Positions 5,411 to 63,928 of a DNA stretch of 64,000 nucleotides are shown piece by piece. The notes under the pieces were generated by a model. That model had not been told where the DNA came from. It saw only the letters and a list, made by a program, of their open reading frames with translations, and ran no database searches. Position numbers and translations under genes: made by a program. Within the stretch, counting starts at the first letter, position 1, and every line of letters begins with the position of its first letter. Origin of the DNA: Macrostomum hystrix (lineage: Eukaryota > Animalia > Platyhelminthes); contig CATNEN010000038.1 in NCBI GenBank assembly GCA_950097015.1, positions 23,002,001-23,066,000 of the forward strand. The letters are read 5' to 3'.

Positions 5411-5603
5411 TGCAGGATGGCTGTGGGCAATGGCACATCATTTGGTCACACTTGAGGTTGGCCCTCAAGGGCGTAAATTGCACGACATGCCCCCGAGCCT
5501 TCTCTCCGCGGCTGCGCCCCAAATGAATGTGGCCTCGCCGCAGAATCGAGCTCAGGGACCTTGGTGCGAGAGGCAAAGGTGTTAACCGCTCTGACGCTGA
5601 CCC
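5411..5603 (-). mobile_element. tRNA-SINE copy with an internal deletion
   Basis: Matches both ends of the 3260-3605 element and lacks the middle. Confidence 0.85.
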
Positions 5604-5899
5604 CCTTAAAAATTTATTAATATTATGCAAAGATAAAGCTTAATTGGATCTCAAGGGATGCTTTAGTTCGGCAATCCCTAACTCTTTATTCCACCCTGTA
5701 GTGATCTTCGCAGTCCTTTTACCTCTCGCTGTCTCCGCCCACGTGAGTTTAGGCTCTATTGCATGCAGTTATGTGACGCCTCTGCCGCAGGTTGGCGGCG
5801 AAAATCGAAGACAAGAAGCGGTTGCTCAAGCTTCTTCTTTACCCGGCTGGCTAGGACTTGCGGACGGTTGCCACGGTTTTGACTTGACGAGCAGTTCAC

Positions 5900-42720: not shown

Positions 42721-45700
42721 TTAGTCCTGTTTTGTGAGCCGAAATTCGCGCCAACAATTGGTAGCGGATGCTACAAGAAGCAGACAGAGAACCAGACAGG
42801 CTAAATATGTGGACAATATAATCAGCGTTAGCCAATTATCAACAATAGACACAGTGTCAATGCTTAGATTAACAGCTCCGGTGAATAAATTAGCTAGAAT
42901 AAAATAAGCCAATCCGTATTGGCCAATTCTAGTTAGCAGCGTAGATTGAGATTGAGTGGCAGTGCTGCCTAGACAGAGAAGCTGGTTCAGTGTGAGCAGT
43001 AGCAGCACCTGACTACAGGAGGCTAAACAGGTGAGCATAAAGGCGGCATTGAACAATAGGCGAGACGGTTCAGTGTAGACTGGCGGCAGGTTGATTAGCG
43101 GCAGTAACCATGGCAACGCAACGAATGTGAGTAACATCAGAGGCCAGGTGATAAAACTGCTGGAATTGCCTGCAAATGGATAAGTATGCCTTTTAAATAC
43201 AGATACTCTATGCTAGCGGCATTTCAGAATTTTGTTTATTATAAATAGATCTTATCTAGACACTAATCTATCAGATCTTATCTAGACACTAATCTATCAG
43301 ATCTTATCTAGACACTAATCTATCAGATCTTATCTGGACACTAATCTATCAGATCTTATCTAGACACTAATCTATCAGATCTTATCTAGACACTAATCTA
43401 TCAGATCTTATCTAGACACTAATCTATCAGATCTTATCTAGACACTAATCTATCAGATCTTATCTAGACACTAATCTATCAGATCTTATCTAGACACTAA
43501 TCTATCAGATCTTATCTAGACACTAATCTATCAGATCTTATCTAGACACTAATCTATCAGATCTTATCGAGACACTTATCTATCGGATCTTATCTGGACA
43601 CTAATCTATCAGATCTTATCTAGACACTAATCTATCGGATCTTATCTAGACACTAATCTATCAGATCTTATCTAGACACTAATCTATCAGATCTTATCGA
43701 GACACTTATCTATCGGATCTTATCTGGACACTAATCTATCAGATCTTATCTAGACACTAATCTATCGGATCTTATCTAGACACTAATCTATCAGATCTTA
43801 TCTAGACACTAATCTATCAGATCTTATCTAGACACTAATCTATCAGATCTTATCGAGACACTAATCTATCAGATCTTATCTAGACACTAATCTATCAGAT
43901 CTTATCGAGACACTAATATATCAGATCTTATCTAGACACTAATCTATCGGATATTATCCAGACACTAATCTACGAGTACAGTTGATATTCGGTAGCCATC
44001 ACCAACGCACCATTGCCAGTAGCTGCAGCCAATCGTCGGCTAACAGCAGCGCCGGCGCAATAGACAGCGCAGTAGGCCGGCAGCGACAACAGACCCTCCT
44101 TGTTGGCTAACAGGGGCCACAGCTGTTGCCTGTCAGTGTCGGCTAGCAGGAAATCAGCTCCGCCGAGTGGCAGCAGCAGGCAGGCATGGCAAATACCCAG
44201 AATGACCGCCCACAGGCCTGGCCAACGGGACAGCGGCTGCCAGGCGGCTCTGAGGCAGGCCAAGGTGAGAAAGAAATTCCAATGCACTCCGTACTCAGTC
44301 ACGTGCTCCTGATGATAAATGGGAGGTGAGATGGGTGACCGTGATAAAAATAGTTGGCAGTTTAAAAACCAGGTTAATATTTAAAGGGACAATAAACTAG
44401 AGTGGCTAAACTTCAAATGGGGTTGTAGGGTTGAAGAGGCATGAGGTTGAAGGTTGAAGGACCAAAATTTTCAAGGGTCACGGGGTTAAGGAGTCGTGAG
44501 GTTGTAGGGTTACGCGGTTGAAGGGTCATCAGATCATGAGATTGAAGGGTTATCATGTTGTGAGGTTGAAGGGTCATCATGTTGTGAGGTTTAAGGTTGA
44601 ATCATTCACCTTATTAAAGGTTACGGCAGAGGGGTCTGTGGCAGAGCGGTTATCGCGTTTGCCTCTCGCGCCAAGGTCCCTAAGTTCGATTCCACGGCGA
44701 GGCCACATTTATTTGGGGCGCAGCCGCGGAGAGAAGGCTTGAGGGCTTGTCTTGCAATTTACGCCTTTGAGGGCCAACCTCCAAGGCACTGTGAGAGTGT
44801 ACACTGCCTGACGATGAGAAAGTCAGGGCAGATGTACACACCTGTGTGAGCGTATGCCTGCGTACAGTATCTGTGTGCGTGTGTGCTCAGGAGTCAGCGA
44901 AACGGGTAGAATTGCCTCCTCGCTGGCTGCGGGTCTAGTGTCACCAAACGATATGCCATTGCCCCAGCCCTCCTGCAATTATCATTTTATTAAAAGGTTA
45001 CGGCATTTAACTGAAGGTGAAATCCCAATCCACTACCTGATAATCCGAGGCCTTCACAGCCAAGGTTCTGGCCAAGCCCAGCAGAGCCAACGGCAGGCAG
45101 GCGGTGACAAGAGATCGACGCCACATGCTCAGCGACGCGCCCGATGGCGACGGTGGCGGCGCGAGTAGGCCGCTGGCGAAGGTGAAGGCAGGAGCGCCGA
45201 TGTCCATTAAGCCGACGCCAGCAGATTCAGCTTTGGCTAGACGGCGAGGCATTGCTGGGAAGTCAACGGCGAAGATAGCAACAGAAGTCTGCAGCAGCAG
45301 CAGAGACTGGAAAATATTTTCGCCATATTGGATTGAGTATGATTGAGTAGGGAAACGATTGGGGCTATTTGTATAAACAGTGCCTTGATTTCGGATTTGA
45401 AGGTTAAATCGAGTTTATTAACAGAAGTGGGTGGGATGAAATTGGAGGATTTCTTAATAAGAATGGGGTTACAGGACTAGAATCGGATTTGATTGATTGA
45501 GTTTGAATCGAGAATTGTGGTAAGATTCGATGATTTAGATGGGATTTTAGCCTTGAGGCAGGATTTCGGTAAGATCATTGGAGTGGGATTTGATGATTGG
45601 GTGGGATTTGATGATTGGGATAGGATTTGATGATTGGGGTGGGATTTGATGATTTGGATGGGATTTGATTATTGTGGTGGGATTTGATGATTGGGATGGG

Positions 45701-46534
45701 ATTTGATGATTTGGATGGGATTTGATGATTGGGTGGGATTAGATTATTGTGGTGGGATTTGATGATTTGGATGGGATTTGATTATTGTGGTGGGATTTGA
45801 TGATTTGGATGGGATTTGATTATTGTGGTGGGATTTGATGATTTGGATGTGATTCGATGATTGGGATAGGATTTGATGATTGGGGTGGGATTTGATTATT
45901 GTGGTGGGATTTGATGATTGGGATGGGATTTGATGATTTGGATGGGATTTGATGATTGGGTGGGATTAGATTATTGTGGTGGGATTTGATGATTTGGATG
46001 GGATTTGATTATTGTGGTGGGATTTGATGATTGGGATGGGATTTGATGATTTGGATGGGATTTGATGATTGTGGTGGGATTTGATGATTTATTGGGATTT
46101 GGGATTGAGTGTTTTGGAGGGACTGTTTCTGATTTAAGGATTCACATAATCCCACTCACCTGAAAATCCTTAAACAATTGCTTAGGTTGCGGCAGTGCAA
46201 CAATAAAATCGAAATTATTCCTCTGCGCAATGGGCACCAATAGCAGCAAGCAAGCCCCGGCTAAACAAACTAATTCGGTCACGTGATCGGCTAGTACAGT
46301 CAGCTGCAGCACAGCAGACAGGCACAATAAAATCGATTCCAAATAATTGATTAGCCGCATTGGTCCGAAGCAGCATCTCAACTGAGCAGTGACGCCCAAC
46401 AGTAGGCAGGGCAGACTCAGGTGCAGCCAAATCTCTGTTAGGCCGCAGCCTCCGTGACCAGCTATGAAAGCTTCGTGTTGAGCCTTCCTGCTAGTCATGT
46501 TATTAGTATTTTGATTGCGATTATCAGTTGCCAT
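42721..46534 (-). CDS. PIGW: GPI inositol acyltransferase (PIG-W/Gwt1), 4 exons (46534 or 46498-46160, 45306-45037, 44308-44011, 43169-42721), ~451-463 aa
   Basis: Motifs RKAQHEAF, AVDFPAMPRRLAKAESAGVGLMDIG, YQ|EHVTEYGVHWNFFLTL, NKEGLLSLPAY and ILANLFTGAVNL. All splice phases are compatible. Confidence 0.93.
43246..43970. repeat. 26-bp intronic minisatellite (AGATCTTATCTAGACACTAATCTATC)n
   Basis: Fills PIGW intron 3. Confidence 0.95.
44631..44980 (+). mobile_element. Full-length tRNA-SINE in PIGW intron 2
   Basis: A box, B box and full body present. Confidence 0.9.
45580..46100. repeat. 19-20-bp intronic minisatellite (GGGATTTGATGATTTGGAT)n
   Basis: Fills PIGW intron 1. Confidence 0.93.
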
Positions 46535-48081
46535 GCGGATGAGACTTGACTATGTCGTAGGTATTGACAATCAGATAGCTTGAGAATAGGCAGTACAGAT
46601 AGCGAAACCAAACTAGTTGACTGCGATGATGCCGCATGCAACGAAACGGTGTCAGCAGTTCAGCAGCAGGCGTGGCGAAGATTAATCCTGTTGGGCTGCT
46701 CTGCGGCCAGAAGTAGTTCTTTAGAACAGCTGGGATGCTGGCTAGAATGCCTATAAAATATAGGGATGAGAAACGGGAAGATAGGGGAAGAGGGGGTAGA
46801 TAAATGGTACACTGCCTGACAACGGGAGAACCTGTGTGAGCCAGTGCCTGCGTACAATATCTGTGTGCGTGTGTGCTCAGGAGTCAGCGAAATGGGCAGA
46901 ACTGCCTCCTCGCTGGCTGCGGGTCCAGTGTCACCAAATGATGTGCCATGGTGTGCTTATAGAAAAAGAATGATAGCCTAGTCTTGTAGAGTCAAAATAC
47001 TTACCGCTGTACTTTCGAATCAGCGATTCGGTACGCAGCAGCAGCACAGGCAGCTGGTGGCAGCAGTCAGCAGTGTCGCAAGCCCAGCGCTGCAGTGCCC
47101 GATGATTGGCGTGGCCGCTAACGCCGTCGCTGTCAAATGTAATCAGACAGTCAACCTGCCAATCAGCTAGCACGGGTCTAAGGCAGTTGTCTATGGCCGC
47201 AACTGACCAATCAACTGCGTTACTATCCGGCAATTGAGGATCGTCAATAATTTTTAATCTCCGACAGTCCTGTCCCAGTCCTTTCGTCCAGGCAGCTGTC
47301 AGTTCCTTAACACGCTGTTTACCCTGACCGTAGTAATCCCCTGACGACAGGCAGGCCAGGTAGAGCTCATAACGGCAAGATCTGCCTGCCGCTAGCAACA
47401 GGGGCGCAAAGAACATGCATTCGTCGTCAGGATGAGCGGTAACCAATAGCAACCGAATTGGGCGAAACCGAACTGAGACTTCAGCAGAGGATAACTGACT
47501 CTGATATGAAGAAAAATTAGGGAATTTATGAAGCACAGTAATAATGACTCTCATTCCAGGGGATCTGGGTATGACAGTAAACTGTCATACTGGGATTACT
47601 GGGATCACAGTAAATATAATGGGATCTGTGCCAACAGAATGGGATCTCTTTTAATAGAATGGGATCTCAGTAACTAGAATGGGATCTCAGTAAATAGAAT
47701 GGGATCTCAGTAAATAGAATGGGATCTGAGCATGAGAATGAGATCGAAAATTTAGTACGGGATATAGGAAACAGAATGGGATGTTAAAATTAGAATAGGA
47801 TCAGAATATTAGAATGGGATACGAGGATCAGAATGTGTTGGCTGGCTTAGACGACACGTCTAGAAAAATGCCTTTACTGAGCTTGAGCTTACCAACTTTA
47901 ATCTCTCTGATTCTAGTAGCAGATCGCCCAGCTGTTGCAGACACTTGTCACTGAGTCGGCAAGCAAGCCAATAAGCAGCAGCAGCAGTGCTAAATAGAGT
48001 AAACACGTTTCCAAGTATTAGTATCAACGGCGACAAGTAACCTAAGTCACCGAGAAGTGAGTAGTTAGACAGGTAATTGGA
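46524..48081 (-). CDS. PIGL: GlcNAc-PI de-N-acetylase (PIG-L), 3 exons (48081-47893, 47500-47005, 46750-46524)
   Basis: N-terminal TM segment, catalytic AHPDDE, ITFDSDGVSGHANH and C-terminal CMRHHRSQLVWFRYLYCLFSSY. Splice phases 0 and 1 are compatible. No ATG in the first exon. Confidence 0.93.
46805..46950 (+). mobile_element. Partial tRNA-SINE in the last PIGL intron
   Basis: 3' half of the SINE body. Confidence 0.85.
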
Positions 48082-48174
48082 CTGAAAAGTTTGAAATTAT
48101 GATTTTTTAATGCGTAAAACACAACGCTATCTTGTTTTCCGAACAAAGCAAAGCAAAAAAATTCACATTTTATA

Positions 48175-48460
48175 GGGGCCAGCGGCAGAGCAGTTAACGC
48201 GTTTGCCTCTCGCACCAAGGTCCCTAAGTTCGATTCCACGGAGAGGCCATATTTATTTGGGGCGCAGCCGCGGAGGGAAGGCTTGGGGGCTTGTCGTGCA
48301 ATTTACGCCCCTTACACTGCCTGGCGATGAGAAAGTCAGGGCAGATGTACACACCTGTGTGGGTGTGTGCTCAGGAGTCAGCGGAATGAGCAGAATTGCC
48401 TCCTCGCTGGCTGCGGGTCTAGTGTCACCAAATGATGTGCCGTTAGCCGCAGCCCTCTGT
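48175..48460 (+). mobile_element. tRNA-SINE copy upstream of PIGL
   Basis: A box and B box present; internal deletions. Confidence 0.88.
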
Positions 48461-49719
48461 CATTAATGATTTAATTAGCGATCTAGATTTTTAGAAATAA
48501 AAACATTATCTATAGGATCTGTGCATCTTTATGTCTGTTTAAGTACATGAAATTTCGCTCTTAGCGAAGTGTGATTACGGCGTGTGCTATATATTTGTTC
48601 AGTATAGGTGACTGGTATGCCTGCAAAAAATCTAGAAAACAAAATAAAAATAAGATCAGAGTATTTGATAATGAAAAGTTTTTCAAACGAACAAAAATAT
48701 AATTTCTTTATTTAAAATATGAATTTATTGCGGCTACCATTCAGTCGTTAGATTGTCGAAGCTCGGACTTGAAGGTAGGGGGTTCGATTTCCAATTCAAC
48801 AGGTGGAACACGTTTTTGTAACTTAGCAACCAAGTCAGACAATAAACACTCCATGTGAGTGTCCATGGACTGAACAGCAGTACGCAGCTATCAGATGCGC
48901 CGCGCAATAGCTGCACACCTGGCTTAACTAGGCCAGGTAGAAAGAAATTAATATTTTAATTACCATTCGTTTAGCAGGCAAAAATACTGAACGAAGTAGG
49001 AAAAAAAGAAGAAAAAAAACGAGAAAAGAGAAAATTAAGTCTAACAAGCTGAAGTTTTGTGAGTGTGATGAATTAAAATGAGGCTTCCAGGCATCAGCAA
49101 ATAGAAATCAGTTCATAGCGATGATAAATTACTGCTATCGCTAACTATTGCAGAAATCGTGCAACCATATTAGAGAAATTTGATAATAACACTGCAGTAA
49201 GACTAAAAACTAATTGAATTTATAAATAGTAAATTAAGTATTAAGGTGAAGAACAAAAAAAGAAGATTTCGAAAGAAATAAAGTAATTAAAAAGCAATCG
49301 AGATTGGCAAGAATTAATTACAGAACCAGATAAACAAAACAAGTAACAAATCTATACTAACCTATACAAAGAGAACAGACAAGAGTTGAAATGAGATCTG
49401 ATGAAATACTGAAAAATAAAATAAAATGTTTTTACACACTTTCCGAGGGTTTTACGATTCGATAAACAATCTAACCATGCGATTGCAAAAATATACGGTG
49501 GACAACTACGACCAAGGCTTAAACCCTAAAATCAAAATAGATTAAAGAAGGAATTCAGTAGATAGGATTACAGTTTAATAATTTAATAAAGAACTTCCGA
49601 TGTATTCGGTAAGAGATTCCCAGGGGATTAATCAAATTGTTTTACGAGAAATGCCAAGAAATTCCCGATAAATTATTGATTTTTTTAGGAATATTCTGAC
49701 GAATTCAATAAGGAATTAA

Positions 49720-50535
49720 CGATGGATTTATCTGCGAATTTCCGATGGATTTATCAAGGAATTCCCGATGGATTTACCTGCGAATTTCCGATGGATTTAG
49801 GAAGAAATTCCCGGTGGATTTAGCAAGGAATTCCCGATGGATTTATCAAGGAATTCCCGATGGATTCACCTGCGAATTTCCGATGGATTTAGCAAGGAAT
49901 TCCCGATGGATTTATCAAGGAATTCCCTATGGATTTATCAAGGAATTCCCGATGGATTTACCTGCGAATTCCCGATGGATTTAGGAAGAAATTCCCGGTG
50001 GATTTAGCAAGGAATTCCCGATGGATTTATCAAGGAATTCCCGATGGATTTACTAAGGAATTTCTGATGGATTTAGCAAGGAATTCCTGATGGATTTATC
50101 AAGGAATTCCCGATGGATTTACCTGCGAATTCTCGATGGATTTAGGAAGAAATTCCCGGTGGATTTAGCGAGGAATTCCCGATGGATTTACCAAGGAATT
50201 CCCGACGGATTTACTAAGGAATTTCTGATGGATTTAACAAGGAATTCCCGATGGATTTACCAAGGAATTCCCGATGGATTTACCAAGGAATTCCCGATGG
50301 ATTTACCAAGGAATTCCCGATGGATTTACTAAGGAATTCCCGATGGATTTACCAAGGAATTCCCGGTGGATTTACCAAGGAATTCCCGATGGATTTACCA
50401 AGGAATTCCCGGTGGATTTACCAAGGAATTCCCGATGGATTTACCAAGGAATTCCCAGTAGATTTACCAAGGAATTCCCGATGGATTTACCAAGGAATTC
50501 CCAGTGGATTTACCAAGGAATTCCCGATGGATTTA
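49720..50535. repeat. 23-bp minisatellite (GGAATTCCCGATGGATTTACCAA)n; related arrays at 53560-53700 and 54000-54250
   Basis: Shared GGAATTC-N-GATGGATTT core on both sides of BPNT2. Confidence 0.93.
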
Positions 50536-51014
50536 GCTAGCAATTCCAGAATGATTTGCTTGGGAGTTCCTGGACAATTAACCAAGAAATATCAATACGA
50601 TTTTCAAGGTTTATTTGAAATTCTAAATGCATTTTACAAGAAATCTTAAATAAATTTATACACGCTATTTCTTAAGTAATGCCAGAAAATAAACAGCTTA
50701 GACTACAAGCAACAGAATTTTTAAGTTTAAAACAAAAATTTACTAGTTAAAAGTTCAACGAACCAAACATAGGCATTTTTGTGACATAAGCATCTTGGAA
50801 AAAGTAGGAAACAAAAATAAGAGTAAAATAGAGTAAATCTAGAGATAATCTAGATTATATTCCAGAGGGAATGGGGTTGTCAGTCAATAAATCAGTTGTC
50901 GAATTATCAATACTGTCAACATTTTAAACTTATCTCTTTCTTTTGTCAACACTTAAACAAACCAGCTGTGCAATGCAATCAATTGTGCAATTTATTACAC
51001 CAAAATAGCCGTTG

Positions 51015-53504
51015 CTATCCTGTAGTTCGACTTTGCTGCTGCTGCTGCTTCGGCTTCAATTTCGAGACTGGAGCGAATGCGACAAAGCCGTCTGAATGTC
51101 GCGGCAGGTCAGGACTGGCATAGTCAATGCTCCTTAGCCTACCAGCCCCGCCTGCTTTGTCATCGGCGCCATCCAGACTGTAAAGCTTGCCGCCCAGACT
51201 CTCAAGTATGGCGTGCCCAGCGCATAGATCCCATTTAGATATTGGGCCAGTGTGCAGGTAGTTGTCGGCTAGGCCCTGCGTTGCGAAGCGATCAATAATG
51301 AGCATAGGTGTCGAGTAAACATGCTTTCACATTTTCTAGGTTTCTAGAAGTACTCAGAGTTGGTTGGTAATAAAATCAAAACCTTTGCCTCTCTATTGTA
51401 ACTGCTTCCCCATTCTCCTATCCTCTCCCTCCCTCTCCTATATTCTCCCTCCCTATCTTATCCTCTCCATCTACTATCCCCTCCCTCCCTCTACTATCCC
51501 CTCCCTCCCTCCCTCTCCTATCCTCTCCCTCCCTCTCCTCTCCTCTCCCTCCCTCTACTATCCCCTCCCTCCCTCTCCTATCCTCTCCCTCCCTCTCCTC
51601 TCCTCTCCCTCCCTCTACTATCCCCTCCCTCCCTCTCCTCTCCTCCCCCTCCCTCTCCTCTCCTCTCCCTCCCTCTACTATCCCCTCCCTCCCTCTCCTC
51701 TCCTCTCCCTCCCTCTCCTCTCCTCTCCCTCCCTCTACTCTCCTCTCCCTCCCTCTCCTATCCTCTCCCTCCCTCTCCTCTCCTCTCCCTCCCTCTACTA
51801 TCCCCTCCCTCCCTCTCCTATCCTCTCCCTCCCTCTCCTCTCCTCTCCCTCCCTCTACTATCCCCTCCCTCCCTCTCCTCTCCTCCCCCTCCCTCTCCTC
51901 TCCTCTCCCTCCCTCTACTATCCCCTCCCTCCCTCCTATCCCCTCCCTCCCTCTCCTCTCCTCTCCCTCCCTCTCCTATCCTCTCCCTCCCTCTCCTCTC
52001 CTCTCCCTCCCTCTACTATCCCCTCCCTCCCTCTCCTCTCCTCCCCCTCCCTCTACTATCCCCTCCCTCTCCTATCCTCTCCCTCCCTCTTCTCTCCTCT
52101 CCCTCCCTCTACTCTCCTCTCCCTCCCTCTACTATCCCCTCCCTCCCGCTACTATCCTTTAATTCATAATGGATGGTTGTGAAAATACAGAAAATCAGCA
52201 ATAATTTCCCCATCTATCTCACCTTGCTGAGCAGTAGAAGCTTATAACCAGCGCCAGCAGCCGATAGTAGCTCCATAGACTCGTTAGGGAACAATTTCTT
52301 GGCTCTGTCTAGTAAATCGGAGCTCTGATGACTGCGCGAGACTAGCACTCGCCTGCTGGCTTGGTCGGCATTTTTCTTTGACGACTGACCGGCCTTGATC
52401 TCGCCGCTGCTAGTTAAGCTTTGGAGCACAATTGGCAGATTAATATTACCCTGCAGACTGTCGGATACTTTCAAATTGCGCCAGGCCCAATAGGTGCGAT
52501 TGGCGAATGGAAAGTGAAGCACGCCGACAAGCGGCACGCCTCTGTAGGCTACGCACACCTGTTTATATGTTTATAAATTTATATCTTAACCACTCTCTCC
52601 TTTCCTTTACCCGTCTGGCATTTCCTCTCCCTTCTATCCTTTCCTCTCCCTCATCTGTCCTTTCCTCTCCGCCTCAGTGCTTTCCTCTCCCACTGTCATT
52701 TCCTCTCCCATTGTGATTTCCTCTCCCACGGTCATTTCCTCTATCTGTCTGCCCTTTCTTCTCTCACTGTCCTTTCCTCTTCCAATCTGCCATTTCCTCT
52801 CCCCTTCTGTCATTTCCTCTCCCCTTCTGTCCTTTCCTCTTCCCATCTGTCCTTTCCTGCCCCCCCGTCTGTCCTTTCCTCTCCCACTGTCTTTTACTCT
52901 GGCCTGGGTAAGTTTCGCTTAAAAATGTGAATTCCTACTATTTTTCAATACAAGCGTAGAAAGTTATAACCATGAAAGCGAGATAAACAGGGCAACTCAC
53001 CTGAACGGACACATACTGCAACATGTGCTCAGTAAACTCCTGCGTACCATCCAATGGATCAACCCACACTAAGACGTCCTTAGAATTGACAAAGAAATCG
53101 TGCCTCAACGGTTCCACATCCGGGTGTCGATGGCTGGCCAGAGCCAGAGCTCGATAATCCAACGGGGCCGCCTGAGCCTCTTCCGATACCAGACGCAGCC
53201 ATGGAAACGATTTGTGAAAGCCATAGACTAATTCGGCATTGGCCGCCAAATCCGCTTGCGTCACTGGCGGCGCCTGGTCGCTAATGTAAACACCGGCCTT
53301 AGTAACGCGAATAGCTTCCCGATGCCTAATAATTAATTGGCCAGCCCGTTCGCATAGTTCAATGCTGACAGACAGCAGCTCCTTGACCGAGACGCCGCGA
53401 CCGCCGCTAAGAAGCGGCACCTCAGTGTGGATCAGGAATAATATAGCCACACCGCTGGCTAGGCAGAAAGCCCCCAGTTTGTTTATCCTCAGACGGCACA
53501 CCGC
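51015..53504 (-). CDS. BPNT2: Golgi PAP phosphatase / inositol monophosphatase 3, 3 exons (53504-53001, 52558-52223, 51275-51015), ~367 aa
   Basis: N-terminal TM anchor, TQAD, SEE, WVDPLDGTQEF, VSRSH, GAGYK and KWDLCAGHAIL. All introns are phase 0. Confidence 0.9.
51420..52155. repeat. Polypyrimidine (CT-rich) tandem repeat in BPNT2 intron 2; a second CT-rich repeat at 52620-52900 in intron 1
   Basis: Period of about 20/60 bp, almost purine-free on the plus strand. Confidence 0.93.
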
Positions 53505-55696
53505 CTGCAATGGGGGATCGATTCAGGATGGTACTCAGTCTGATTTTCAAATAAACTCCATTCGAATTCCTGATGGATTTCCCATGGAATTTCCAAAGGA
53601 TTTCCTATGGAATTCCCGATGGATTTCCTATGAAATTCCTGAAGGATTTCCCATGGAATTTCCAAAGGATTTCCTATGGAATTCCCGATGGATTTCCTAA
53701 CATATCTATCAGAAAAATGTCTAATGGATCTCTGTAACTCCTAAAAGAAAGCGTAACGGATTTTTTAGCCATAATTTTTTTCTACAACTATTCTTAATAA
53801 ATTTTCTAAAAGTAATTTCCTTAAAATCAATCAATTGCCGGATTTCACAAAGGAATTCCGAGACAGATTTTTGGAATTTCTTAAGGATTTTTAATAGAAC
53901 TTTATTCCTAGACGGGTTTTTAAAGGAAGTCCCTGATATACATTATTAAAGGAATTCCCACACCGATTTCTTAAAGGGATCCACAGACCAATTTTTTAGA
54001 GGAATTCCCTGATGGATTGGAAAAGGAATTCACTGATGGATTTAAAAAGGAATTCACTGATGGATTTGAAAAGGAATTCTCTGATGGATTTAAAAATGAA
54101 TTCTCTAATGGATTTGAAAAGGAATTCTCTGGTGGATTTAAAAAGGAATTCTCTGATACATTTAAACAGGAATTCTCTGATACATTTAAAAAGGAATTCA
54201 CTGATGTATTTGAAAAGGAATTCTCTGATGGATTTAAAAAGGAATCCTTTAAGGATGTCCAAAAGGAATTCCCAAATAAATTTTAAAAAATGTATTCCTA
54301 AACGAATCTCGAGAAGGAATCCCCAAAATTATTTCCAAAAGAAATTCTCTAAAGAATTTCCAAAAAGTAATTCCATGACGGCTTTTTTTGAAGTAGCTGC
54401 ATCTATTTTTAATGTAACACAAAAATGTTAAATTTGGCAACCATTTTATCACGAGACAAGACAATAGATAACAAAAGTATGCTTAACTGAGCAAGTGTTT
54501 TACAAAATTGGGCCCCGTATATTTAAAATTTTTACTAATAAAAAGATTTCCATAATATCTGTTCTTTGTTTAAACAAGAGACTTTCAAATTTTTGTTTAA
54601 ACGCACAAAAGTCGCAAGATAACACAAAAGGAATGATATTAAAAAGGAATAAAAGACTCGCATAAATCATGGTTGAATACAGTATAGAAGAAAGGAATGA
54701 AGGTACAATAATTAAGCAACAACAATCAAATAGAGCGCCTTTTAATTGATAGTTATTGCTTAATTAGTCCATGCCTAATGTCTAAACATAAGGAGCGGTT
54801 TCGATTTAAACTCACTAAAAGTAAGCATGCTACTAAATTTATTAATAGTAGTCAGTAGTATGCATAGATAAGAATAGTTAAAATATATACCAAAGGACAA
54901 AACAAAAAAGTATCTCTTGATCAGTAATAAAAACTTTGCAATATACTTGTGTATAAAACTATACAAAAGCATTCAATGTGGAATGCTTAGTAACACGCAA
55001 ATGGTCAGTATCACAGTGCTAAACGTATCTACAAGTAACTTAAAAAAGGATTAAAGTTTTATTTTATTTTTTTGGTTTACAAAAAAATAAAAAAACATGA
55101 TCTAATTTATAGTGCTGGTTGCTGAAAAGCAATCATGAAGATCTAAAAAATACAATAGAAGTGTACAAAAAAATTAAAAATCAAACAAAGGACTAATTTA
55201 TGGTGTAAGAAAATACTTACAGGTTCAAAAAATGAGGAGAAATGAAAAGAAGAACAAAAGATAGCCAATTCCATTTAGAGATCGATACGTAAAAATAGTC
55301 TTATCTACAGTCGCAGACTGACAATTTGCATCAAATTTATGAGAATCGAACAGTGGTACTTATGGGGAATGTTTCGAATATTAATGGCCAGTGAGAGAGA
55401 GAGCAAAACTGATTGAAAATCTTTGGGTTTAGGTCTAGCTGTTTGATGCTTGTTCTAAAAGATTATCCTGGTATCTGAGTAAGAAAATTATTGAACAAAT
55501 ACATCTAGGTTAGTAGTTTAAAATATTCTTAAACCACTTAAATATTGAAAGGTTGCTTACAACTAAGTATTGTTAGGTATTAGAAGACCTAAATGGTTCT
55601 CACAATCAACTACTGATAATGATACATTTAGAAATCAAGGAAGAAAGCGTGCCATTGTTAGTTTAAAAATCAATATTGAACATCAGGCGACCCAGT

Positions 55697-56413
55697 TTAA
55701 ATAACAGACGACATAGATCTACCAGACGGAATTGTGCCCATCAGCTGATCCGTAGACTTGCCATTATTCATAGGGAAGGCGTACTCTCTCTGTACCATTA
55801 GTTCGCGATCTAGTTTCACCTGTGGCACTAGAAAACAGCTAGTAAAGAAGCAGAAGATGACAGATAGTACAGCCAAGCCGAAGCTCCATGATGGCCAATT
55901 AAGTTCGGGATTCGGCAGCCAATAGGGATCTAAGCATTTGCCGCCGAACACAGCGATGCCAACACCAATCAGTGCGCCAATGAATAGCATTCCGTAGGCC
56001 AAGCAGCGGCTTAGCAGCGCCCGCCTCTCTGGATTATCGACGCAGCGAACAACATAGATAACGCAGAGGATTAGCGCGCCAATGTGCAATAGCAGGCCTA
56101 GGGTGATGCAGAACTGAACAAAGCGAAACCAAGGCGGCATTAAATAATCCCTAATGGGATAAAACTCCGGCGCAAATGACCACCAGCAGCCGAAGTAGGA
56201 TCGCATCTCGGGATCTAGACGATGAACTAAACCATCTAGACAGAACTCCCATAGGCCCAGTCGGTCCATTGGTGTGTGCACTCTCGGCCAGCTTTGCAAC
56301 CAGAATGGCGTCACAAAAGACAATAGAACGCACACAAAGCTAAACACTGTACACACTAATGCTGCTCTTGCATAGCCGGACACTATTATATGCTTCTCGG
56401 AGTTGACCGACAT
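55697..56413 (-). CDS. Invertebrate claudin-like / PMP22-superfamily 4-TM protein (238 aa from MSVN)
   Basis: TPFW, GLWEFC...C signature, four hydrophobic segments, SWSFGLA before TM4, and C-terminal SSVI (PDZ-binding-like). Confidence 0.85.
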   Translation of the reverse strand: MSVNSEKHIIVSGYARAALVCTVFSFVCVLLSFVTPFWLQSWPRVHTPMDRLGLWEFCLDGLVHRLDPEMRSYFGCWWSFAPEFYPIRDYLMPPWFRFVQFCITLGLLLHIGALILCVIYVVRCVDNPERRALLSRCLAYGMLFIGALIGVGIAVFGGKCLDPYWLPNPELNWPSWSFGLAVLSVIFCFFTSCFLVPQVKLDRELMVQREYAFPMNNGKSTDQLMGTIPSGRSMSSVI

Positions 56414-59400
56414 TGCACTCCAAAGCTGGGGGAGATTTTCTGTGTTGGCACAGTGATTCTTTAACTGTACGATCTGATTGATTTTTTTCACACTATACTG
56501 TCACTGAAATTAGCAAACATGTGCATACCTTATTAGTTATTTATTGTAAGTATAAAATATAATAATATATGCTCAGTAGCATTAGCAGTAGCAAAAGTTC
56601 AAGATAAAATATGCAAACAAGATAATGCACTGAGTTGTATCAGAAAAGAACTTATTCATACAGCAAAAATATACATATGCAGTTTTATTAAAACAACTAA
56701 AGAACAATTTTAGAAAATATAATACCAAATACAGTGCTAATAACAGTAAGTTAAGCTGATTATCAACTAGTTAACAAACTAACACAGATTTTTGTTGATG
56801 ATGATCATCATTAGATTCAAAATTTTAAATTAAATTTTAACTTTATTTTTCTAAGTAAAATGAACAAGTTAGTTATTTCCAACTGTTTTACAATGACAAG
56901 CATAAATTAAAGAACACCTATTTGAAAAGCAATTAGTTATACTGACTATATGCATTGTATTTGAGTTTTATACAAATAATAGCTAACAATAATGTTTATG
57001 AATCAGCAGTAGTTTTTTATATATTGTTCAATATTGTTTTTGTTAGAAAAAAAACTAATAGTAAAAAGTGCTGTTTTCTACTGTTTCTTTAGTTATCAAT
57101 CTATTAGCTACTTTAAAAGAAAAAATAGAAAAGTAAAACTACAACAGTAAAATGTTTTTTTCACTTAAAAATGTCAAAAATACTACTTTTATTAAAATGG
57201 CTATCAATTTTTAATTTTCACAATTGCCACTCTATTTTTCTTCTTTGTCAAGTAATTTATTTGATTCTGCAATTTGTGTTCTGATTGGCATTTTGACAAT
57301 GGCTAAGGCTACAAGTGATGATTGTATCAATATTAGGATAAGTAGCAGTGTCAGTGACAAAAATGCAAATTATCTTGAGAATGAGAATCTGAATGTTTAA
57401 TGAGATTGATTCTTAACTAGGCTCTGATGATGATGATGATTATAAGAGCATTAAAAAAGAGCAAACATCTTCCATTACAAAGAATATCGCACCAAAAATT
57501 AAATATTATATCCTTCTATTAAAGCTATGTTTGCTTATAAAAAATAGCATGTTTTTATAATTATTTTTTTTTCAAAATGTGCTATTTATATCTTAACCAA
57601 GTACATTATTCCTTATTAGCAATAGTCTACCCAACCATACCCAACTCCAAGTTTTAATGTTTCAATTTTATTCACTTAGTATTACATTACTAGCATTATA
57701 TATTCAGTTTTTATACTGAGCAGCTATTAAAAAATATGTTTAAATATTATTAGCTATTTGGGTTTATAAGCATTAACATTCATTTAATCTGAAGCATATT
57801 GTAAATAGTAGTTACTATATATAGTATGAAATAAATCTTATGGGAGAGCTGCAGTTAGCCATTGCTGACTAGGCTAACTTGAACTAATTGCTTATAGCTT
57901 TTTCAGTTTTTTTCTGTTTTTTTTTCAGTTCTATTTAGCAATAGTATTTGTTTTGCATATTTATTATTTAGTTTAAATCAATGCTTTTGTAAAAAAATGA
58001 TTTTGGCCTCAGTTCTGGTGATATGATAATGATGAGGCAATAGGGCAACTAATATACCATTAATACCCATGCTTTAAGGGTGTTAATGAAAAATCTGAAG
58101 GGGCTGTTAGCCCAAAGGTTGTGTATCAATTTTAGCATACCATAGATGTTTTTGCCCAAGCTATACTTTCAGAGTCAGAGACAGGGGTGTGGGACAAAGC
58201 CCCCACTTTGGGGTGCCATAGACATTTTAGCCTCAGTAAGCCATTCCTATTGGTCAATGCTTTTTTGTGGGTGGTTAATGGTTATTAACTGCCCACAAGA
58301 AAAATTAAATTACTAAGCATTAATTCATCTATGGCCATTAACAGGCAAGACTTTCTGCCTGTCATGGTACAACAGGTTTTTTCCAAAGCAGATGCTAGCC
58401 ATGAAGCTTATTGAATATTGAAACATGATGAGGCATGACTAGATACTAGTTGGCTCTAGGCCTAATTAAACTATGTTTTGGCCATAGACAGACTAGTTGG
58501 CATTGGCATGACTAGTTGGATCAAATTCAGACTCTATGTGATTCCTAGGCACCAATTCAAACTTATAAATCATTGCACAAAAAATTGTAATTGCTGATTA
58601 TGCTTTGATTCTTAGTATTTATTGAAAATATTACCGCACAAACATATAGCCTGTCTCTGATGTAAAACTACTTAACTAGTCAGATAAAAATGCTAAAAAA
58701 ATTGTAAAAAATGAATAGCTAGGCCTATATGTTTTAAAACTTTAAAATTATTCTCTTGGATTTTGCTACCTCAATAATGAAATGTAACAATAAGGCAGCT
58801 AGGACTACAGAGACATTTGCAAATATAGGCCTATGTATATTTTTAATTCTTTCTTGATTTTCTACAAAACAAAACAGGTGCCATGTAGCACGTTGCCTAT
58901 AAGAAAAAAAGCATGAATAAGTGGTGCAGCACAATATACAAAGGAAGCATTCGCGAACAAAACCCGTTTTCATAAAATCTGCCTTGTCTAAAGTAGCTAG
59001 CTAGCAATAAAAATGCGGCTCTGTACGCTTTGTAGATAATTATGCAACCTGAATAAGTCAATGAGCAGACGTTTATTGTATGACCTGCAACCTTCATTTC
59101 AGTCCTCGTAAGTTGTATACTATACTATAAGCAATTATATTACAATTTTAATTCTTTAGAGTGAATACAGGGGTTAAAATCAGTAGTTGGCTTATAAGTT
59201 GCTGCAGAGTGATCCATTGACACAGAGGGGATATAAAGTTCGCCCCTTCCGATAACCATTTTGCCTTTTGTAAAAAATCCAGATTCCAGTCAACAGCATA
59301 CCGATACAGTACAGTACTATAATTTTAAACGACAACTTCCTTCTAATTTTAAAACAGTGCTAATTATAGTTATAACAAGCATATACATAGCAAGATCTGC

Positions 59401-59728
59401 TAGTAGCTTGTTTTTTTATTTCTATGTGTAAATGTATATTTTAATCTCTTTTATTTAAAAATTAAGTTATACTATTGGCCTGAATCTTAGTAATTACGTC
59501 ACATCTATCATTCCCAACTTCCCAATTCCCAGGTTCCCAACGAAAGTAGTTATCGCGTCACTCTGGTGTAGCGAATAAGATACGCCACGGTAAGTCAATC
59601 GCATGATGACTGAATCACGGCTCGTGTCGGGCTAGGCCTTAGGTCTAACTTGGATTAAGAAGTCGTGCATTTAAGTGCCTATTGGCTATCAATAGGCTAT
59701 ATAGCTAATACGGAATATTGTAGAGCAC

Positions 59729-59826
59729 GAATGCGCTGACTGTCTGCCAGATGTAGGTAGCCCCTGGTGGCAAGGCCTGGTGGACCATGCTGACAGAGCC
59801 ACCTGTCTGAGTAGCTAAGCCAGATG
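59729..59826 (+). pseudogene. Decayed fragment of the ZNHIT2 coding sequence
   Basis: GAATGCGCTGACTGTCTGCCAGATGTAG...CCCTGGTGGCAAGGCC...GCTGACAGAG...TAGCTAAGCCAGAT aligns with 62900-62989. Confidence 0.75.
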
Positions 59827-59970
59827 CTTATCTTGCTATATTGCTAATGCTTAGTTCCAAAGTTTCCAGTCTTTGAAGTTTGCACTTCTTTTTATCCCTT
59901 CTTTATTCCTTTGATTAGCTACTCTTTGCTAGCTTTAGCTTTGGTGGGCAAGCTGAATGGTAGGGGCCTA

Positions 59971-60227
59971 CCTGGACACTTCGTCATCTTACAACTTCGT
60001 CATCCAAATGACGATCTGTCCAATATCCCAGAGGGTGGATTACGAAGAGACTTAGACTTGTGGACACTTCGTCATCTATAAAACAAAATTCTTCAAAGTT
60101 AGAACAGAACCACCCCTCCCCACCTGTTGGCACCTATCTTTCAACTCTTAATAATGAAATCAGTTTTGACACCTCTTTTTGACAATTTAGAGTGTGAAGT
60201 GTGTTCACACCTCTGCCCCACCACCTA
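59971..60227. mobile_element. Partial inverted copy of the MITE at 61700-62134
   Basis: Reverse complement of ~61866-62134, beginning CCTGGACACTTCGTCATC. Confidence 0.8.
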
Positions 60228-61699
60228 CTCTGACTACATATCTTGAAAGTTTCTCTGGAGGGATAAGAAATTATTTACATGGACTGGTCACTGGACATGC
60301 TTGTCATCACTCATCATTTATACCTAATTGTTTATATTACGAGTATATAGACATGTACTTATAACAATAGACTTAAAATTGAAATTAATTAGGCCTACTT
60401 ATATTTTTATAGTATCACTATAATATTGAATTGTCATGTGGTGTCTGATAGCTTTTGACCAAACCTAGCTTTTTGACTATGGCCTATTTTGTTTGCAAAT
60501 TTTAGGTGAATTTTTGTTGTAGAGCTAATATCAGGCCTAGGCCTATAATATTCACCTATTAGGCCTAGCTAAGCTAGGCTAGCTATATTCTATATAACTG
60601 CAGAGTTTAGGCCTACAGCAATCTGCCTTTAAACCCCATAGGGGCCCTAAGAAAAAATCAACTGTCTTGTAGTGTAGTTGCACTTTGCACATTAAATTTT
60701 GTATTTTAACAAAGTTGACATTTGATTGACATTTATATAAAGGTTTTAAAAATGGCATGGCATATCAAATCCCTCAATAACTGCCATATAGAAGAGTTTG
60801 TATAGCGCCTAGCATTAAATATCCTTTGCAAATACCTTTTGCAATCTCCTATTTTTGGTTAGGCCTATCAACTACTACCGAGACTACCTATACCTATAGG
60901 CAGTGGGACATTTCATGGTGAAGCATACATGCGCAACACCCGGCCGACCCGGCCAGTTTGGCCGGGTGAAACGAGGGCCAAGCAAGGTAAGTCGCAAAAA
61001 CCAATAGACCAAGTGCAAAAAATCAAAGGGGGGACCAAGGGACAAAAAAGGAAGGCGTGAAGAAAAGGAAAAAGGGGAGAGAAAAAGAGAGCAAATGAGA
61101 GCAAACTAAGTCGTAAATAGAGCAATGAACTAAGTCGCAAATGAGAGCAAAAACTAAGTTGCACGGCCGGCTAAGATTTGGGAGGTTGCACATGTATGTG
61201 GTGAAGTGTTGTTAGCTTAGTGCAGTTCTCTTTTTAGCTAAAATGTATATAGTCCCTTGCACATTTATATGAAGTTAGTGCCAATATGATGAAATAAAAT
61301 GATGATCTACTATTATTATTGGATGGCTTGTGGTAAGTAGATTGTAGATATGAGTTTGGCATGAGTCTCGGACAACTGGACAAGTAACCTAGGGTTGACA
61401 ATGTAGTCAACAGTCATAGCAGCTATCCACTAAGCATATAGTAACTGTGCATTTTATTAACATTTTCCCCTAAAAACTAATATAGATTAATAAATGGCTA
61501 CTTATCTATAACAATAGCTAGCTACTAGCTACTTTGGTGTAAAATAATATTGCAATATTGTAATTGCAATCAAATATAGAAGTATTGACTTTGTGCTATA
61601 TTAGCTAGGTAGCTAGTTAATTAGTTCTTTTTAAACATTGATATAATATTTTATGAATATATATTTGTAGCTAGCTAACTCAAAGTATGCAGATATGGA

Positions 61700-62134
61700 T
61701 CCTAGACACTTTGTCATCTTACTACTTTGTCATCTTACAACTTCGTCATCCACTTAGAAGGTAGGACACTTTGTCATCCAGCCAATTGGCATGCTTTAAA
61801 GTTTGGTCAGTTCGTCATCTACTAATAAATAAATAAGCAATCTAGTTCATCATCAATAAAGTGAGGGTGGGGTGGTGGGGCAGAGGTGTGAACACACTTC
61901 ACACTCTAAATTGTCAAAAGGTGTCAAAACTGATTTCATTATAAGAGTTGAAAGATTGGTGCCAACACGATGTGAGGAGGGGTGGGGAGGGGTGGTTCTG
62001 TTCTAACTTTGAAAACTTTTGTTTTATAGATGACAAAGTGTCTACATGTCTAAGTCTCTTCGTCATTCATCCTCTGAGAAATTGGACAGATTGTCATCTG
62101 GATGACAAAGTTGTAAGATGACAAAGTGTCCAGG
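61700..62134. mobile_element. MITE-like non-autonomous DNA transposon
   Basis: Terminal inverted repeats CCTAGACACTTTGTCATCTTA ... TAAGATGACAAAGTGTCCAGG, with subterminal ACTTYGTCATC repeats. Confidence 0.7.
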
Positions 62135-62479
62135 TACCACCACTACCACCACCACCAGCAGATATAGCTATCTATTAATACTAATTAGGTAAAAAACATA
62201 TTTTTATTGTTTTATATCATTAAAGTCTATAACATATTTCCTTAAACAAATATTTTAGTGCTTACTTTACCTAGTTAGCCCTCTGTAGCTTATGGAAATA
62301 TGTATTTTACTAGATAAATGACAATATTATTTCTAGTTTCATTGTGCGCTTTTATTTATTGCAAATTTATGATTCTTGTTATGCTAAACTAAGGATTAGC
62401 TCTCGTGAAATCAGATTTACATTTAATATTTGCCATATCAATATCCTTAATCCAGGCCATTACACCTGACTATTTCTAG

Positions 62480-63928
62480 GAAACTGCCAATTCACCAATC
62501 TGTGGCATCTGCACCAACTCTGGTTCAGTTGGCAGGTACACATGCCCAAAATGTGGCATAGCCTACTGTTCAGTAGCATGCTACCGACACGAGCGACACT
62601 CGGCCTGCTCCGAGGCATTCTATCGCGACTGCTGCCTGGAGTCCCTGCGCGGCGAGATGGTCGGCTCTGCTGAGAGGCGTGCTATGGCCGACGTGCTGCG
62701 TCGTCGACTAGCTCAGGAGGCAGAGGAGAACGCACTTGACAATGTGCTAGACGATGAGGACGAAGACGACGAAGAAGACGATCTGGCCAGTCGGCTAGCT
62801 GGCGTTGATCTTGACTCTGACGAACTCGACACTGACGCAATCTGGCGCCTGCTCACCCCAAGCGAGCGTCGGCGCTTTGTACGCAGTTTAGAGACTGGCG
62901 AATGCGCCGACTGCCTGCCAGATGTAGCGCCCTGGTGGCAAGGCCCGGTGCGCGACGCTGACAGAGAGCCGCCATTAGCTAAGCCGGATACCACTCTATT
63001 GGCTAGCCTGGCACCTGGGGCATCAAACAAATCGCCTAGTCCTCTGATGCCGCTAGTTCTGCTTGAAGCCCTGCTTGCCTACGCTTACGCTATGCGACTG
63101 AGCAACTGCGACCTGACTGACTGTCCCGATCAGCTGATCACCTGCTGCCGTCTGCTGTGGCCCTGCTTACCCGGCAACACAGCCACCCCAACCTCCGCCG
63201 ACAAGACAGCCACCCCAACCTTTGTCGCTAAGACAGCAACACCAACCTCCGCCGATAGGACAACCACCCCAACCTCCGCCGCTAAGACAGCAACACCAAC
63301 CTCCGCCGCTAAGACAACCACCCCAACCTCCGCCGCTAAGACAGCAACACCAACCTCCGCCGCTAAGACAACCACCCCAACCTCCGCCGCTAAGACAGCA
63401 ACACCAACCTCCGCCGCTAAGACAGCAACACCAACCTCCGCCGCTAAGACAGCAACACCAACCTCCGCCGCTAAGACAGCAACACCAACCTCCGCCGCTA
63501 AGACAGCAACACCAACCTCCGCCGCTTCGTCCAACTCGCCGCTCGCCACTGTGGATCTAACAATAGCCAGATTCTTGCACCGTTTACAGACGCACGCTCG
63601 CCAGCTGTGCTATTCCAATTCGTTGTTCTTAGCCTGCTTGCACGACGCTGTCAGGCTGTTAAATCAGGACCGCAGTCTTAGCTATCTGGAGCGAGCTCTG
63701 GGTGATTTGAAAGCTGCCTTGCAATTTAGCCGCACTCGCTATGCTCGGTTGGCTATTAAACGATTGGACTTCATCGTTGCTTGGCTAGTCTCCGGCGGCG
63801 ACAACCAAGTTGTTAAACAATTGAATAGTTACACTCTGTGTAGCCAACTGGTGCCGTTACTAGAACTAGCTATTTGTCAGTACGCCACAGATTTGGTCGC
63901 TAAGGAGCCGATTGATAAATTAGATTAG
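62480..63928 (+). CDS. ZNHIT2: Zinc finger HIT domain protein 2, single coding exon, with an inserted (TATPTSAAK)n repeat
   Basis: The frame extends 59 codons upstream of ATG 62657 and contains the zf-HIT CGIC...RYTCPKCGIAYCSVACYRHERHSACSEAFYRD, followed by LASRLAGVDLD, IWRLLTPSERRRF and PWW. Confidence 0.88.
   Translation, partial: ETANSPICGICTNSGSVGRYTCPKCGIAYCSVACYRHERHSACSEAFYRDCCLESLRGEMVGSAERRAMADVLRRRLAQEAEENALDNVLDDEDEDDEEDDLASRLAGVDLDSDELDTDAIWRLLTPSERRRFVRSLETGECADCLPDVAPWWQGPVRDADREPPLAKPDTTLLASLAPGASNKSPSPLMPLVLLEALLAYAYAMRLSNCDLTDCPDQLITCCRLLWPCLPGNTATPTSADKTATPTFVAKTATPTSADRTTTPTSAAKTATPTSAAKTTTPTSAAKTATPTSAAKTTTPTSAAKTATPTSAAKTATPTSAAKTATPTSAAKTATPTSAAKTATPTSAASSNSPLATVDLTIARFLHRLQTHARQLCYSNSLFLACLHDAVRLLNQDRSLSYLERALGDLKAALQFSRTRYARLAIKRLDFIVAWLVSGGDNQVVKQLNSYTLCSQLVPLLELAICQYATDLVAKEPIDKLD
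63178..63525 (+). repeat. 27-bp coding minisatellite in ZNHIT2
   Basis: About 13 in-frame units of ACAGCAACACCAACCTCCGCCGCTAAG. Confidence 0.95.

What the first reader, a model, noticed from the sequence alone, without database searches (positions are those of the whole stretch)
47893..62660. Three conserved genes lack their own ATG and start exactly at phase-0 AG acceptors: AUG probably supplied by a spliced leader
Seen: PIGL begins TTTTCAG|TCC AAT TAC (48081) with an in-frame TAA just upstream. BPNT2 begins CATTGCAG|GCG GTG TGC CGT (53504) with an in-frame TGA a few codons upstream. ZNHIT2 begins TATTTCTAG|GAA ACT GCC (62480), where the TAG itself is in frame. Adding only Met gives MSNYL...TM, MAVCRLRINKLG...TM and METANSPICGIC, which match ortholog N-termini in length (human ZNHIT2 starts MEPAGPCGFC). 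Established: flatworm spliced leaders end in AUG, which can act as the initiator. Inference: all three depend on trans-splicing for translation, and ORF finders truncate them (ZNHIT2 loses its whole zinc finger).
Basis: partly seen in the sequence, partly recalled or inferred. Interest (0 to 1): 0.85.

Follow-up and report, generated by a model that had tools for sequence, protein, structure and literature searches.

The report
Genes borrowing the spliced leader's AUG
Three single-copy housekeeping genes of this Macrostomum flatworm (PIGL, BPNT2, ZNHIT2) have no start codon of their own and most likely take it from the AUG that ends the worm's trans-spliced leader RNA, a mechanism already described in flatworms, so these are further examples and not a new principle.

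Summary
Each of the three reading frames opens right after an AG acceptor in phase 0. Each has an in-frame stop 1, 6 or 7 codons upstream and no in-frame ATG before its essential domain. The genome carries a canonical spliced-leader (SL) RNA gene whose exon ends ...TTGCATG|GTAAG.

For BPNT2, an assembled RNA contig follows all three exons, leaves the genome exactly at the predicted acceptor and carries 23 further foreign letters. That length is about what a k=31 assembler would keep of a shared leader. The tool did not print those letters.

For PIGL, RNA confirms the exon-1 donor, but the contig stops 65 nt short of the acceptor.

In M. lignano, all seven database entries for the BPNT2 and ZNHIT2 orthologues also lack a Met and begin within 0-3 codons of the same position. 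One read-through model shows the TTG-CAG acceptor is conserved.

The mechanism is published (Cheng et al. 2006; slORFfinder 2023; the ATG remark in Wiberg et al. 2023). This scan has already reported the same thing at five other loci of this genome. Interest is low.

The parts
48082..48089 (-). PIGL trans-splice acceptor CTTTTCAG (fits the M. lignano SL-acceptor motif [T/C]TNCAG)
   Evidence: motif from PMC8629364
48097..48099 (-). in-frame TAA six codons upstream of PIGL codon 2
47893..48081 (-). PIGL exon 1 (63 codons, N-terminal membrane anchor, no ATG in any frame). The donor at 47893 is confirmed by an RNA contig, which reaches only to 48016.
   Evidence: (record 14)
47005..47500 (-). PIGL exon 2 (PIG-L domain, HPDDE motif)
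46524..46750 (-). PIGL exon 3 with stop TGA at 46526-46524. The whole model is 303 codons plus the leader's Met.
53505..53512 (-). BPNT2 trans-splice acceptor CATTGCAG (fits [T/C]TNCAG). TTG-CAG is conserved in M. lignano, where a read-through model starts LQAVCRL.
53523..53525 (-). in-frame TGA seven codons upstream of BPNT2 codon 2
53001..53504 (-). BPNT2 exon 1 (168 codons: short tail, membrane anchor, start of the inositol-monophosphatase fold). An RNA contig ends its match at 53505 and runs on for 23 foreign letters.
   Evidence: (record 19)
52223..52558 (-). BPNT2 exon 2. Flanking introns read GTGAGT..AAACAG and GTGAGA..ACGCAG.
   Evidence: (joints)
51015..51275 (-). BPNT2 exon 3 coding part with stop. 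The 3' UTR runs on to at least 50664.
   Evidence: (records 4, 19)
62471..62479 (+). ZNHIT2 acceptor TATTTCTAG. Its TAG is an in-frame stop. It is a TAG rather than a CAG acceptor, so it does not fit the top motif.
62480..63928 (+). ZNHIT2 single coding exon (482 codons plus stop). zf-HIT covers residues 6-36 (62495-62587). The first in-frame ATG is at 62657.

Best explanation
PIGL, BPNT2 (a Golgi-type inositol-monophosphatase-family enzyme) and ZNHIT2 are transcribed with an upstream outron that carries no usable start codon. BPNT2 and PIGL probably belong to a same-strand, operon-like row: claudin-like > BPNT2 > PIGL > PIGW.

The spliceosome joins the worm's spliced leader, whose last three bases are AUG, to the AG acceptor that sits in phase 0 directly before codon 2. 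Ribosomes then start at the leader's AUG. The resulting proteins begin M-SNYL..., M-AVCRLRINKLG... and M-ETANSPICGIC....

Shown here:
- the sequence anatomy of the three sites;
- the SL RNA gene ending in ATG|GTAAG;
- use of the BPNT2 acceptor, with a foreign 5' piece joined to it;
- the single-copy state of the three genes;
- Met-less orthologues in M. lignano.

Inferred:
- that the foreign piece on BPNT2 is the leader;
- that PIGL and ZNHIT2 are trans-spliced at these sites;
- that translation starts at the leader's AUG.
For: (1) SL RNA gene. The 3' 20-mer of the published M. lignano leader occurs 31 times exactly in this genome, 127 times with up to 2 mismatches, against 1 control hit. In locus L007 it reads ...GACTCAATTTATTGCATG|GTAAGAC. 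The transcript folds into three hairpins with a U-rich Sm-like site between hairpins 2 and 3, z = -4.5.

(2) BPNT2 RNA. Contig record 19 of run X4 (1368 nt) matches 50772-51274, 52222-52555 and 52998-53505 with GT..AG introns. It then has 23 letters that match nothing in 47860-53850. So the message leaves the genome at the predicted AG|G.

The one extra matched base (53505) is what the leader's final G would give. A count of 23+1 letters is close to what a k=31 assembly should keep of a leader shared by about 3,500-7,250 genes (gene count from PMC10468722). This last step is my inference.

(3) No other start is available. In-frame stops lie 1-7 codons upstream, and the first in-frame ATGs fall at codon 161 (BPNT2), codon 60 (ZNHIT2, after the zinc finger), or not at all in exon 1 (PIGL).

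(4) Each gene is the only copy in the 220-Mb assembly. BPNT2 and PIGL are spliced and expressed.

(5) M. lignano orthologues. Three GenBank BPNT2 entries start VCRLRLNKLG and are flagged 'partial'. A UniRef model starts LQAVCRL, which is TTG-CAG read through. Three ZNHIT2 entries start EGPTKSSIC, PTKSSIC and TKSSIC, all 'partial'.

(6) In the alignment, the first BPNT2 residue falls one column before the initiator Met of three more distant orthologues. ZNHIT2 would have 8 residues before the first Cys, as in Bugula.

(7) Literature. All reported flatworm leaders end in AUG, and that AUG can serve as initiator (Cheng et al. 2006, pmid 16230357, as cited in PMC12582326 and PMC5832876). [quoted passage not shown] The acceptor motif [T/C]TNCAG (PMC8629364) fits PIGL and BPNT2.
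Against: The 23 foreign letters on the BPNT2 contig were not printed, so their identity with the leader is unproven.

The PIGL contig ends at 48016, 65 nt before the acceptor. No RNA was laid on ZNHIT2.

The ZNHIT2 acceptor is TAG, not the CAG of the enriched motif.

The leader's AUG has U at position -3, a weak Kozak context. No protein-level evidence exists here.

The PIGL N-terminal length is only loosely comparable with orthologues. The H of HPDDE would fall at 87; orthologues range from 22 to 139, with a median of 57.
Confidence: 0.85

Rival explanations
1. Each gene has an unrecognised upstream cis exon, possibly a micro-exon, that carries the ATG and ends in phase 0. The acceptors would then be ordinary internal acceptors.
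For: The 23 foreign letters on BPNT2 could in principle be the end of a cis exon lying more than 345 nt upstream, outside the laid stretch. Flatworm acceptors can be shared between cis- and trans-splicing (PMC12582326). PIGL and ZNHIT2 have no junction data.
Against: None of seven M. lignano database entries for BPNT2 and ZNHIT2, including six GenBank models, carries such an exon. All are Met-less at the same place. The N-termini already match orthologue lengths with only Met added. The BPNT2 contig carries only 23+1 extra letters, the length expected for a shared leader in a k=31 assembly and not for a 5' UTR exon. The base before GCG is G, as in ...ATG. All three acceptors are in phase 0.
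Confidence: 0.08
2. The genes start at a non-AUG codon or a downstream AUG, or are decaying pseudogenes, so no donated AUG is needed.
For: Near-cognate codons exist: TTG at 53510-53508 upstream of BPNT2, and CTG as codon 4 of PIGL exon 1.
Against: The TTG of BPNT2 lies in the part removed by the splice seen in RNA. Downstream AUGs would delete the membrane anchors, catalytic motifs or the zinc finger. The frames are intact, single-copy and 51-79% identical to M. lignano over their full length. BPNT2 and PIGL are spliced and expressed.
Confidence: 0.03

Closest known systems
[quoted passage not shown]
   Same: The leader ends in AUG followed by a GU donor. The recipient ORF lacks its own AUG and begins in frame at the trans-splice acceptor. 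Conserved housekeeping genes are affected.
   Different: The host is a free-living basal flatworm (Macrostomum) rather than a parasite. Translation from the leader's AUG was tested experimentally in schistosomes and not here.
slORFs (ORFs created by SL addition; slORFfinder, PMC9851317)
   Same: The start codon is supplied by the leader, and such ORFs are missed or truncated by standard annotation.
   Different: That work used ribosome footprints from nematodes, ascidians and Euglena. No flatworm or Macrostomum data were analysed there.
SL trans-splicing and operons in Macrostomum (Ustyantsev & Berezikov 2021, PMC8629364; Wiberg et al. 2023, PMC10468722)
   Same: The leader's 3' 20-mer is identical. 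The acceptor motif [T/C]TNCAG fits. There is enrichment in conserved genes and same-strand gene rows. The authors remark that the leader probably contains the start ATG.
   Different: Neither paper, in the passages I read or term-searched, lists genes that depend on the leader's AUG. These three genes are not named in the searched literature.

Membership tests
Genes initiated at the flatworm spliced leader's AUG | The organism has an SL RNA whose exon ends in AUG directly before a GU donor, with an Sm site and hairpins | tested here: met
   ...TTGCATG|GTAAG, 31 exact copies of the 3' 20-mer, three hairpins plus a U-rich site, z = -4.5
Genes initiated at the flatworm spliced leader's AUG | The mature mRNA carries the leader joined at the acceptor in front of codon 2 | tested here: inconclusive
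   BPNT2: an RNA contig leaves the genome at 53505/53504 and carries 23 foreign letters, which were not printed. PIGL: the contig ends 65 nt short.
Genes initiated at the flatworm spliced leader's AUG | The acceptor is in phase 0 with the conserved ORF, with an upstream in-frame stop and no usable genomic AUG | tested here: met
Genes initiated at the flatworm spliced leader's AUG | The same Met-less start is conserved in a related species | tested here: met
   M. lignano BPNT2 (4 entries) and ZNHIT2 (3 entries) all lack Met at the same position. No M. lignano PIGL was found.
Genes initiated at the flatworm spliced leader's AUG | Translation starts at the leader's AUG (protein N-terminus or ribosome footprints) | not testable with these tools
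   No proteomic or Ribo-seq data are available here
PIG-L / inositol monophosphatase (BPNT2-type) / zf-HIT proteins | Pfam domain above the gathering score | tested here: met
   PF02585 at 65.4 bits, PF00459 at 42.9 bits, PF04438 at 33.8 bits, all above their cut-offs

The most novel reading that the evidence does not exclude
Dependence on the leader's AUG is obligate and conserved across Macrostomum species for these housekeeping genes. Un-trans-spliced transcripts would then be untranslatable, and trans-splicing efficiency would act as a translational on/off gate for a row of secretory-pathway genes (claudin-like > BPNT2 > PIGL > PIGW). Many of the '5'-partial' gene models in Macrostomum annotations would be complete genes of this kind.
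Probability: 0.3. Interest if true: 0.4.

Novelty: new member of a known kind. Interest (0 to 1): 0.2.

Why it matters
The main value is for annotation. ATG-based gene finders truncate these genes: ZNHIT2 loses its zinc finger, and BPNT2 loses its anchor and catalytic motifs. Databases then flag the M. lignano orthologues as partial. Adding a rule for a phase-0 acceptor plus the leader's AUG would repair many Macrostomum gene models. It would also allow a count of how many conserved genes depend on trans-splicing for translation. It does not reveal a new mechanism.

Tried and rejected
(a) I tried to read the leader on the messages. Read laying allows one call of at most 6 kb, so only PIGL and BPNT2 were laid. 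The loose end at 53505 was among the rows not printed, and ZNHIT2 was left out.

(b) I looked for RNA-derived proteins of this species that start with the leader's Met. Three homologous-protein searches returned no protein of this species. One HMMER search of representatives returned only M. lignano and more distant orthologues.

(d) I looked for paralogues or processed retrocopies that might preserve a leader-gene junction. All three genes are single-copy. The only extra match is a roughly 100-nt ZNHIT2 fragment with no 5' end.

(e) Rfam found nothing in the window.

(f) The Mlig gene ids were not found in any held paper, and no supplement is held for PMC8629364.

(g) The joined exon models were frame-checked in a local script only.

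(h) The species name (M. hystrix in earlier notes of this scan) was not verified here. I can only say it is a Macrostomum other than M. lignano.
Full report
**Observation**

- **PIGL (minus strand).** The site is CTTTTCAG|TCC AAT TAC, with the first exon base at 48081. An in-frame TAA lies at 48099-48097. Exon 1 (48081..47893) contains no ATG in any frame.
- **BPNT2 (minus strand).** The site is CATTGCAG|GCG GTG TGC CGT, with the first base at 53504. An in-frame TGA lies at 53525-53523. The first in-frame ATG is codon 161.
- **ZNHIT2 (plus strand).** The site is TATTTCTAG|GAA ACT GCC, starting at 62480. The acceptor's TAG is itself in frame. The first in-frame ATG is codon 60, at 62657.

Pfam places the zf-HIT domain at residues 6-36 of the ZNHIT2 frame, so an ATG-based ORF call loses the whole finger. 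It also confirms PIG-L and the inositol-monophosphatase family for the other two genes.

In each gene only one AG lies between the upstream stop and the first essential residues. Phase 0 was therefore not picked from alternatives. Three of three in phase 0 is only mildly unlikely on its own.

**Organism and leader**

Earlier notes of the scan named the genome as a Macrostomum flatworm. I tested this as follows.

- The 3' 20-mer of the published M. lignano leader (PMC8629364) occurs 31 times exactly and 127 times with up to 2 mismatches in the window's own 220-Mb assembly. The control pattern hit once. Some copies sit in arrays spaced about 11.6 kb apart.
- One copy (L007) reads ...CGGTCTCTTACTGCGAAGACTCAATTTATTGCATG|GTAAGAC.
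- That copy folds into three hairpins with a U-rich Sm-like site between the second and third, z = -4.5.

So the leader exon ends in ATG directly before its donor.

The nearest database proteins are from M. lignano, at 79% identity (BPNT2 exon 1) and 51% (ZNHIT2). The window therefore comes from another Macrostomum species. I did not verify the name M. hystrix given in earlier notes.

**RNA evidence**

One read-laying run was allowed, with a limit of about 6 kb. I laid window:47860-53850, which covers the PIGL and BPNT2 acceptors.

Run X4 behaves as RNA. It shows spliced contigs and has no depth in BPNT2 intron 1.

**BPNT2.** Record 19 (1368 nt) matches 50772-51274, 52222-52555 and 52998-53505. 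Its last 23 letters fit nothing in the stretch.
- After placing the cuts on GT..AG, the model is exon 1 53504..53001, exon 2 52558..52223 and exon 3 51275..51015. That gives 366 codons plus stop.
- The message leaves the genome exactly at the predicted AG|G. It does not run on into the 345 nt of genome upstream.
- The single extra matched base (53505) is what the leader's final G would produce.
- 23+1 letters is about what a 31-mer assembler should retain of a leader shared by several thousand genes. About 6-7 gene-specific bases are needed for uniqueness among the 3,496-7,254 trans-spliced genes reported in PMC10468722. This is my inference.
- The tool did not print these letters, so their identity with the leader is not shown.

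**PIGL.** Record 14 (2369 nt) starts its match exactly at the exon-1 donor (47893) but ends at 48016, 65 nt short of the acceptor.

**Comparative evidence**

All three genes are the only copies in the assembly.

- **BPNT2 in M. lignano.** Three GenBank entries start VCRLRLNKLG and are flagged partial. A UniRef model starts LQAVCRL, which is the TTG-CAG of the acceptor read through. The acceptor and the Met-less start are therefore conserved.
- **ZNHIT2 in M. lignano.** Three entries start EGPTKSSIC, PTKSSIC or TKSSIC, and all are flagged partial. This species has ETANSPIC.
- **Synteny.** BPNT2 and ZNHIT2 lie on the same contigs in M. lignano, with accession numbers two apart, so their neighbourhood is kept.
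- **N-terminal lengths.** In an alignment with more distant orthologues, the first BPNT2 residue falls one column before their initiator Met. With Met added, ZNHIT2 has 8 residues before the first Cys, as in Bugula; Rhagoletis has 5.
- **PIGL.** The length comparison is loose. The H of HPDDE would fall at 87, against 22-139 (median 57) in 116 orthologues. No M. lignano PIGL was returned.

**Mechanism**

The best-supported reading is that the three pre-mRNAs carry an outron without a usable start. The leader is then spliced to the phase-0 acceptor, and the leader's AUG becomes codon 1.

BPNT2 and PIGL sit in a same-strand row: claudin-like (56491..55697), BPNT2, PIGL, PIGW. Their spacers are filled with repeats. 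That matches the operon-like arrangement described for M. lignano (PMC8629364).

The PIGL and BPNT2 acceptors fit the enriched trans-acceptor motif [T/C]TNCAG. ZNHIT2 uses TAG instead.

My per-gene confidence is about 0.9 for BPNT2, 0.85 for ZNHIT2 and 0.8 for PIGL.

**Rivals**

- **A cis-spliced upstream exon carrying the ATG.** This cannot be excluded for PIGL and ZNHIT2 without junction reads. However, none of the seven M. lignano entries shows such an exon. The N-termini need only a Met to match orthologues. The foreign piece on BPNT2 also has the length expected of a shared leader.
- **Non-AUG or downstream starts, or pseudogenes.** These are contradicted by the observed splice, which removes the upstream TTG of BPNT2. 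They would also delete essential domains. The frames are intact, conserved and single-copy.

**What is known**

- All reported flatworm leaders end in AUG, and that AUG can act as initiator (Cheng et al. 2006, pmid 16230357, as cited in PMC12582326 and PMC5832876).
- slORFfinder treats leader-supplied starts in general (PMC9851317).
- Wiberg et al. remark that the Macrostomum leader probably contains the start ATG (PMC10468722).
- The scan has already reported the same habit at five other loci of this genome. I treated those notes as leads only.

These three genes are therefore new members of a known kind. The practical value is for annotation.

**Limits**

- The joined exon models were only frame-checked locally and were not sent to any search.

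Noticed in passing
window 46524-46550 (minus strand): PIGL's stop (TGA, 46526-46524) overlaps the first ATG of the next gene, a GWT1/PIGW homologue (ATG at 46534; a second ATG at 46498). No AG lies between the stop and either ATG. A TAG| acceptor in phase 0 with the PIGW frame lies at 46552-46550, inside PIGL's last exon. RNA contig record 14 (2369 nt) is far longer than the PIGL message and must run into PIGW. Another finding of this scan already covers this (s1-853591).
   Followed up: partly
window 59705-59839 (plus strand): About 100 nt, 2.7 kb upstream of ZNHIT2, are a decayed duplicate of its central ECADCLPDV..PWWQG motif (61% aa and 79% nt identity, one TAA). No further part of the gene and no 5' end is duplicated.
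   Followed up: yes
window 49710-50547, 53564-53699, 54000-54271: Related 23-24-nt satellite arrays (GGAATTCCCGATGGATTT-type) lie in the outron or spacer upstream of both the PIGL and BPNT2 acceptors. C/T-rich 20-nt arrays fill both BPNT2 introns (51414-52158, 52594-52900).
   Followed up: no
window 48185-48440, also about 44600-44980 and 46840-46980: A tRNA-like, SINE-type repeat lies just upstream of the PIGL acceptor. Its RNA contig depth is very high (up to about 3980 in X4), and many different loose ends show it is a multi-copy transcribed element. Related copies lie in or near PIGW and PIGL introns.
   Followed up: no
window 48597-49558: Exact-match RNA contigs (X4 records 16 and 17, depth 9-12) cover part of the spacer between BPNT2 and PIGL at a depth like that of the exons, while BPNT2 intron 1 has none. 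This is compatible with a polycistronic precursor, a long 3' UTR or an independent transcript. The strand is unknown.
   Followed up: no
window 63170-63540 (plus strand): ZNHIT2 carries about 14 tandem 9-residue repeats (TATPTSAAK type). M. lignano has a different, shorter repeat (SSAHAPTPT type) at the same place, so this is a fast-evolving low-complexity insert. It also swamped the first protein search.
   Followed up: no
G000 contigs C15, C17, C42: Leader genes recur at a spacing of about 11.6 kb, consistent with earlier notes that the SL RNA gene sits in the rDNA repeat.
   Followed up: no
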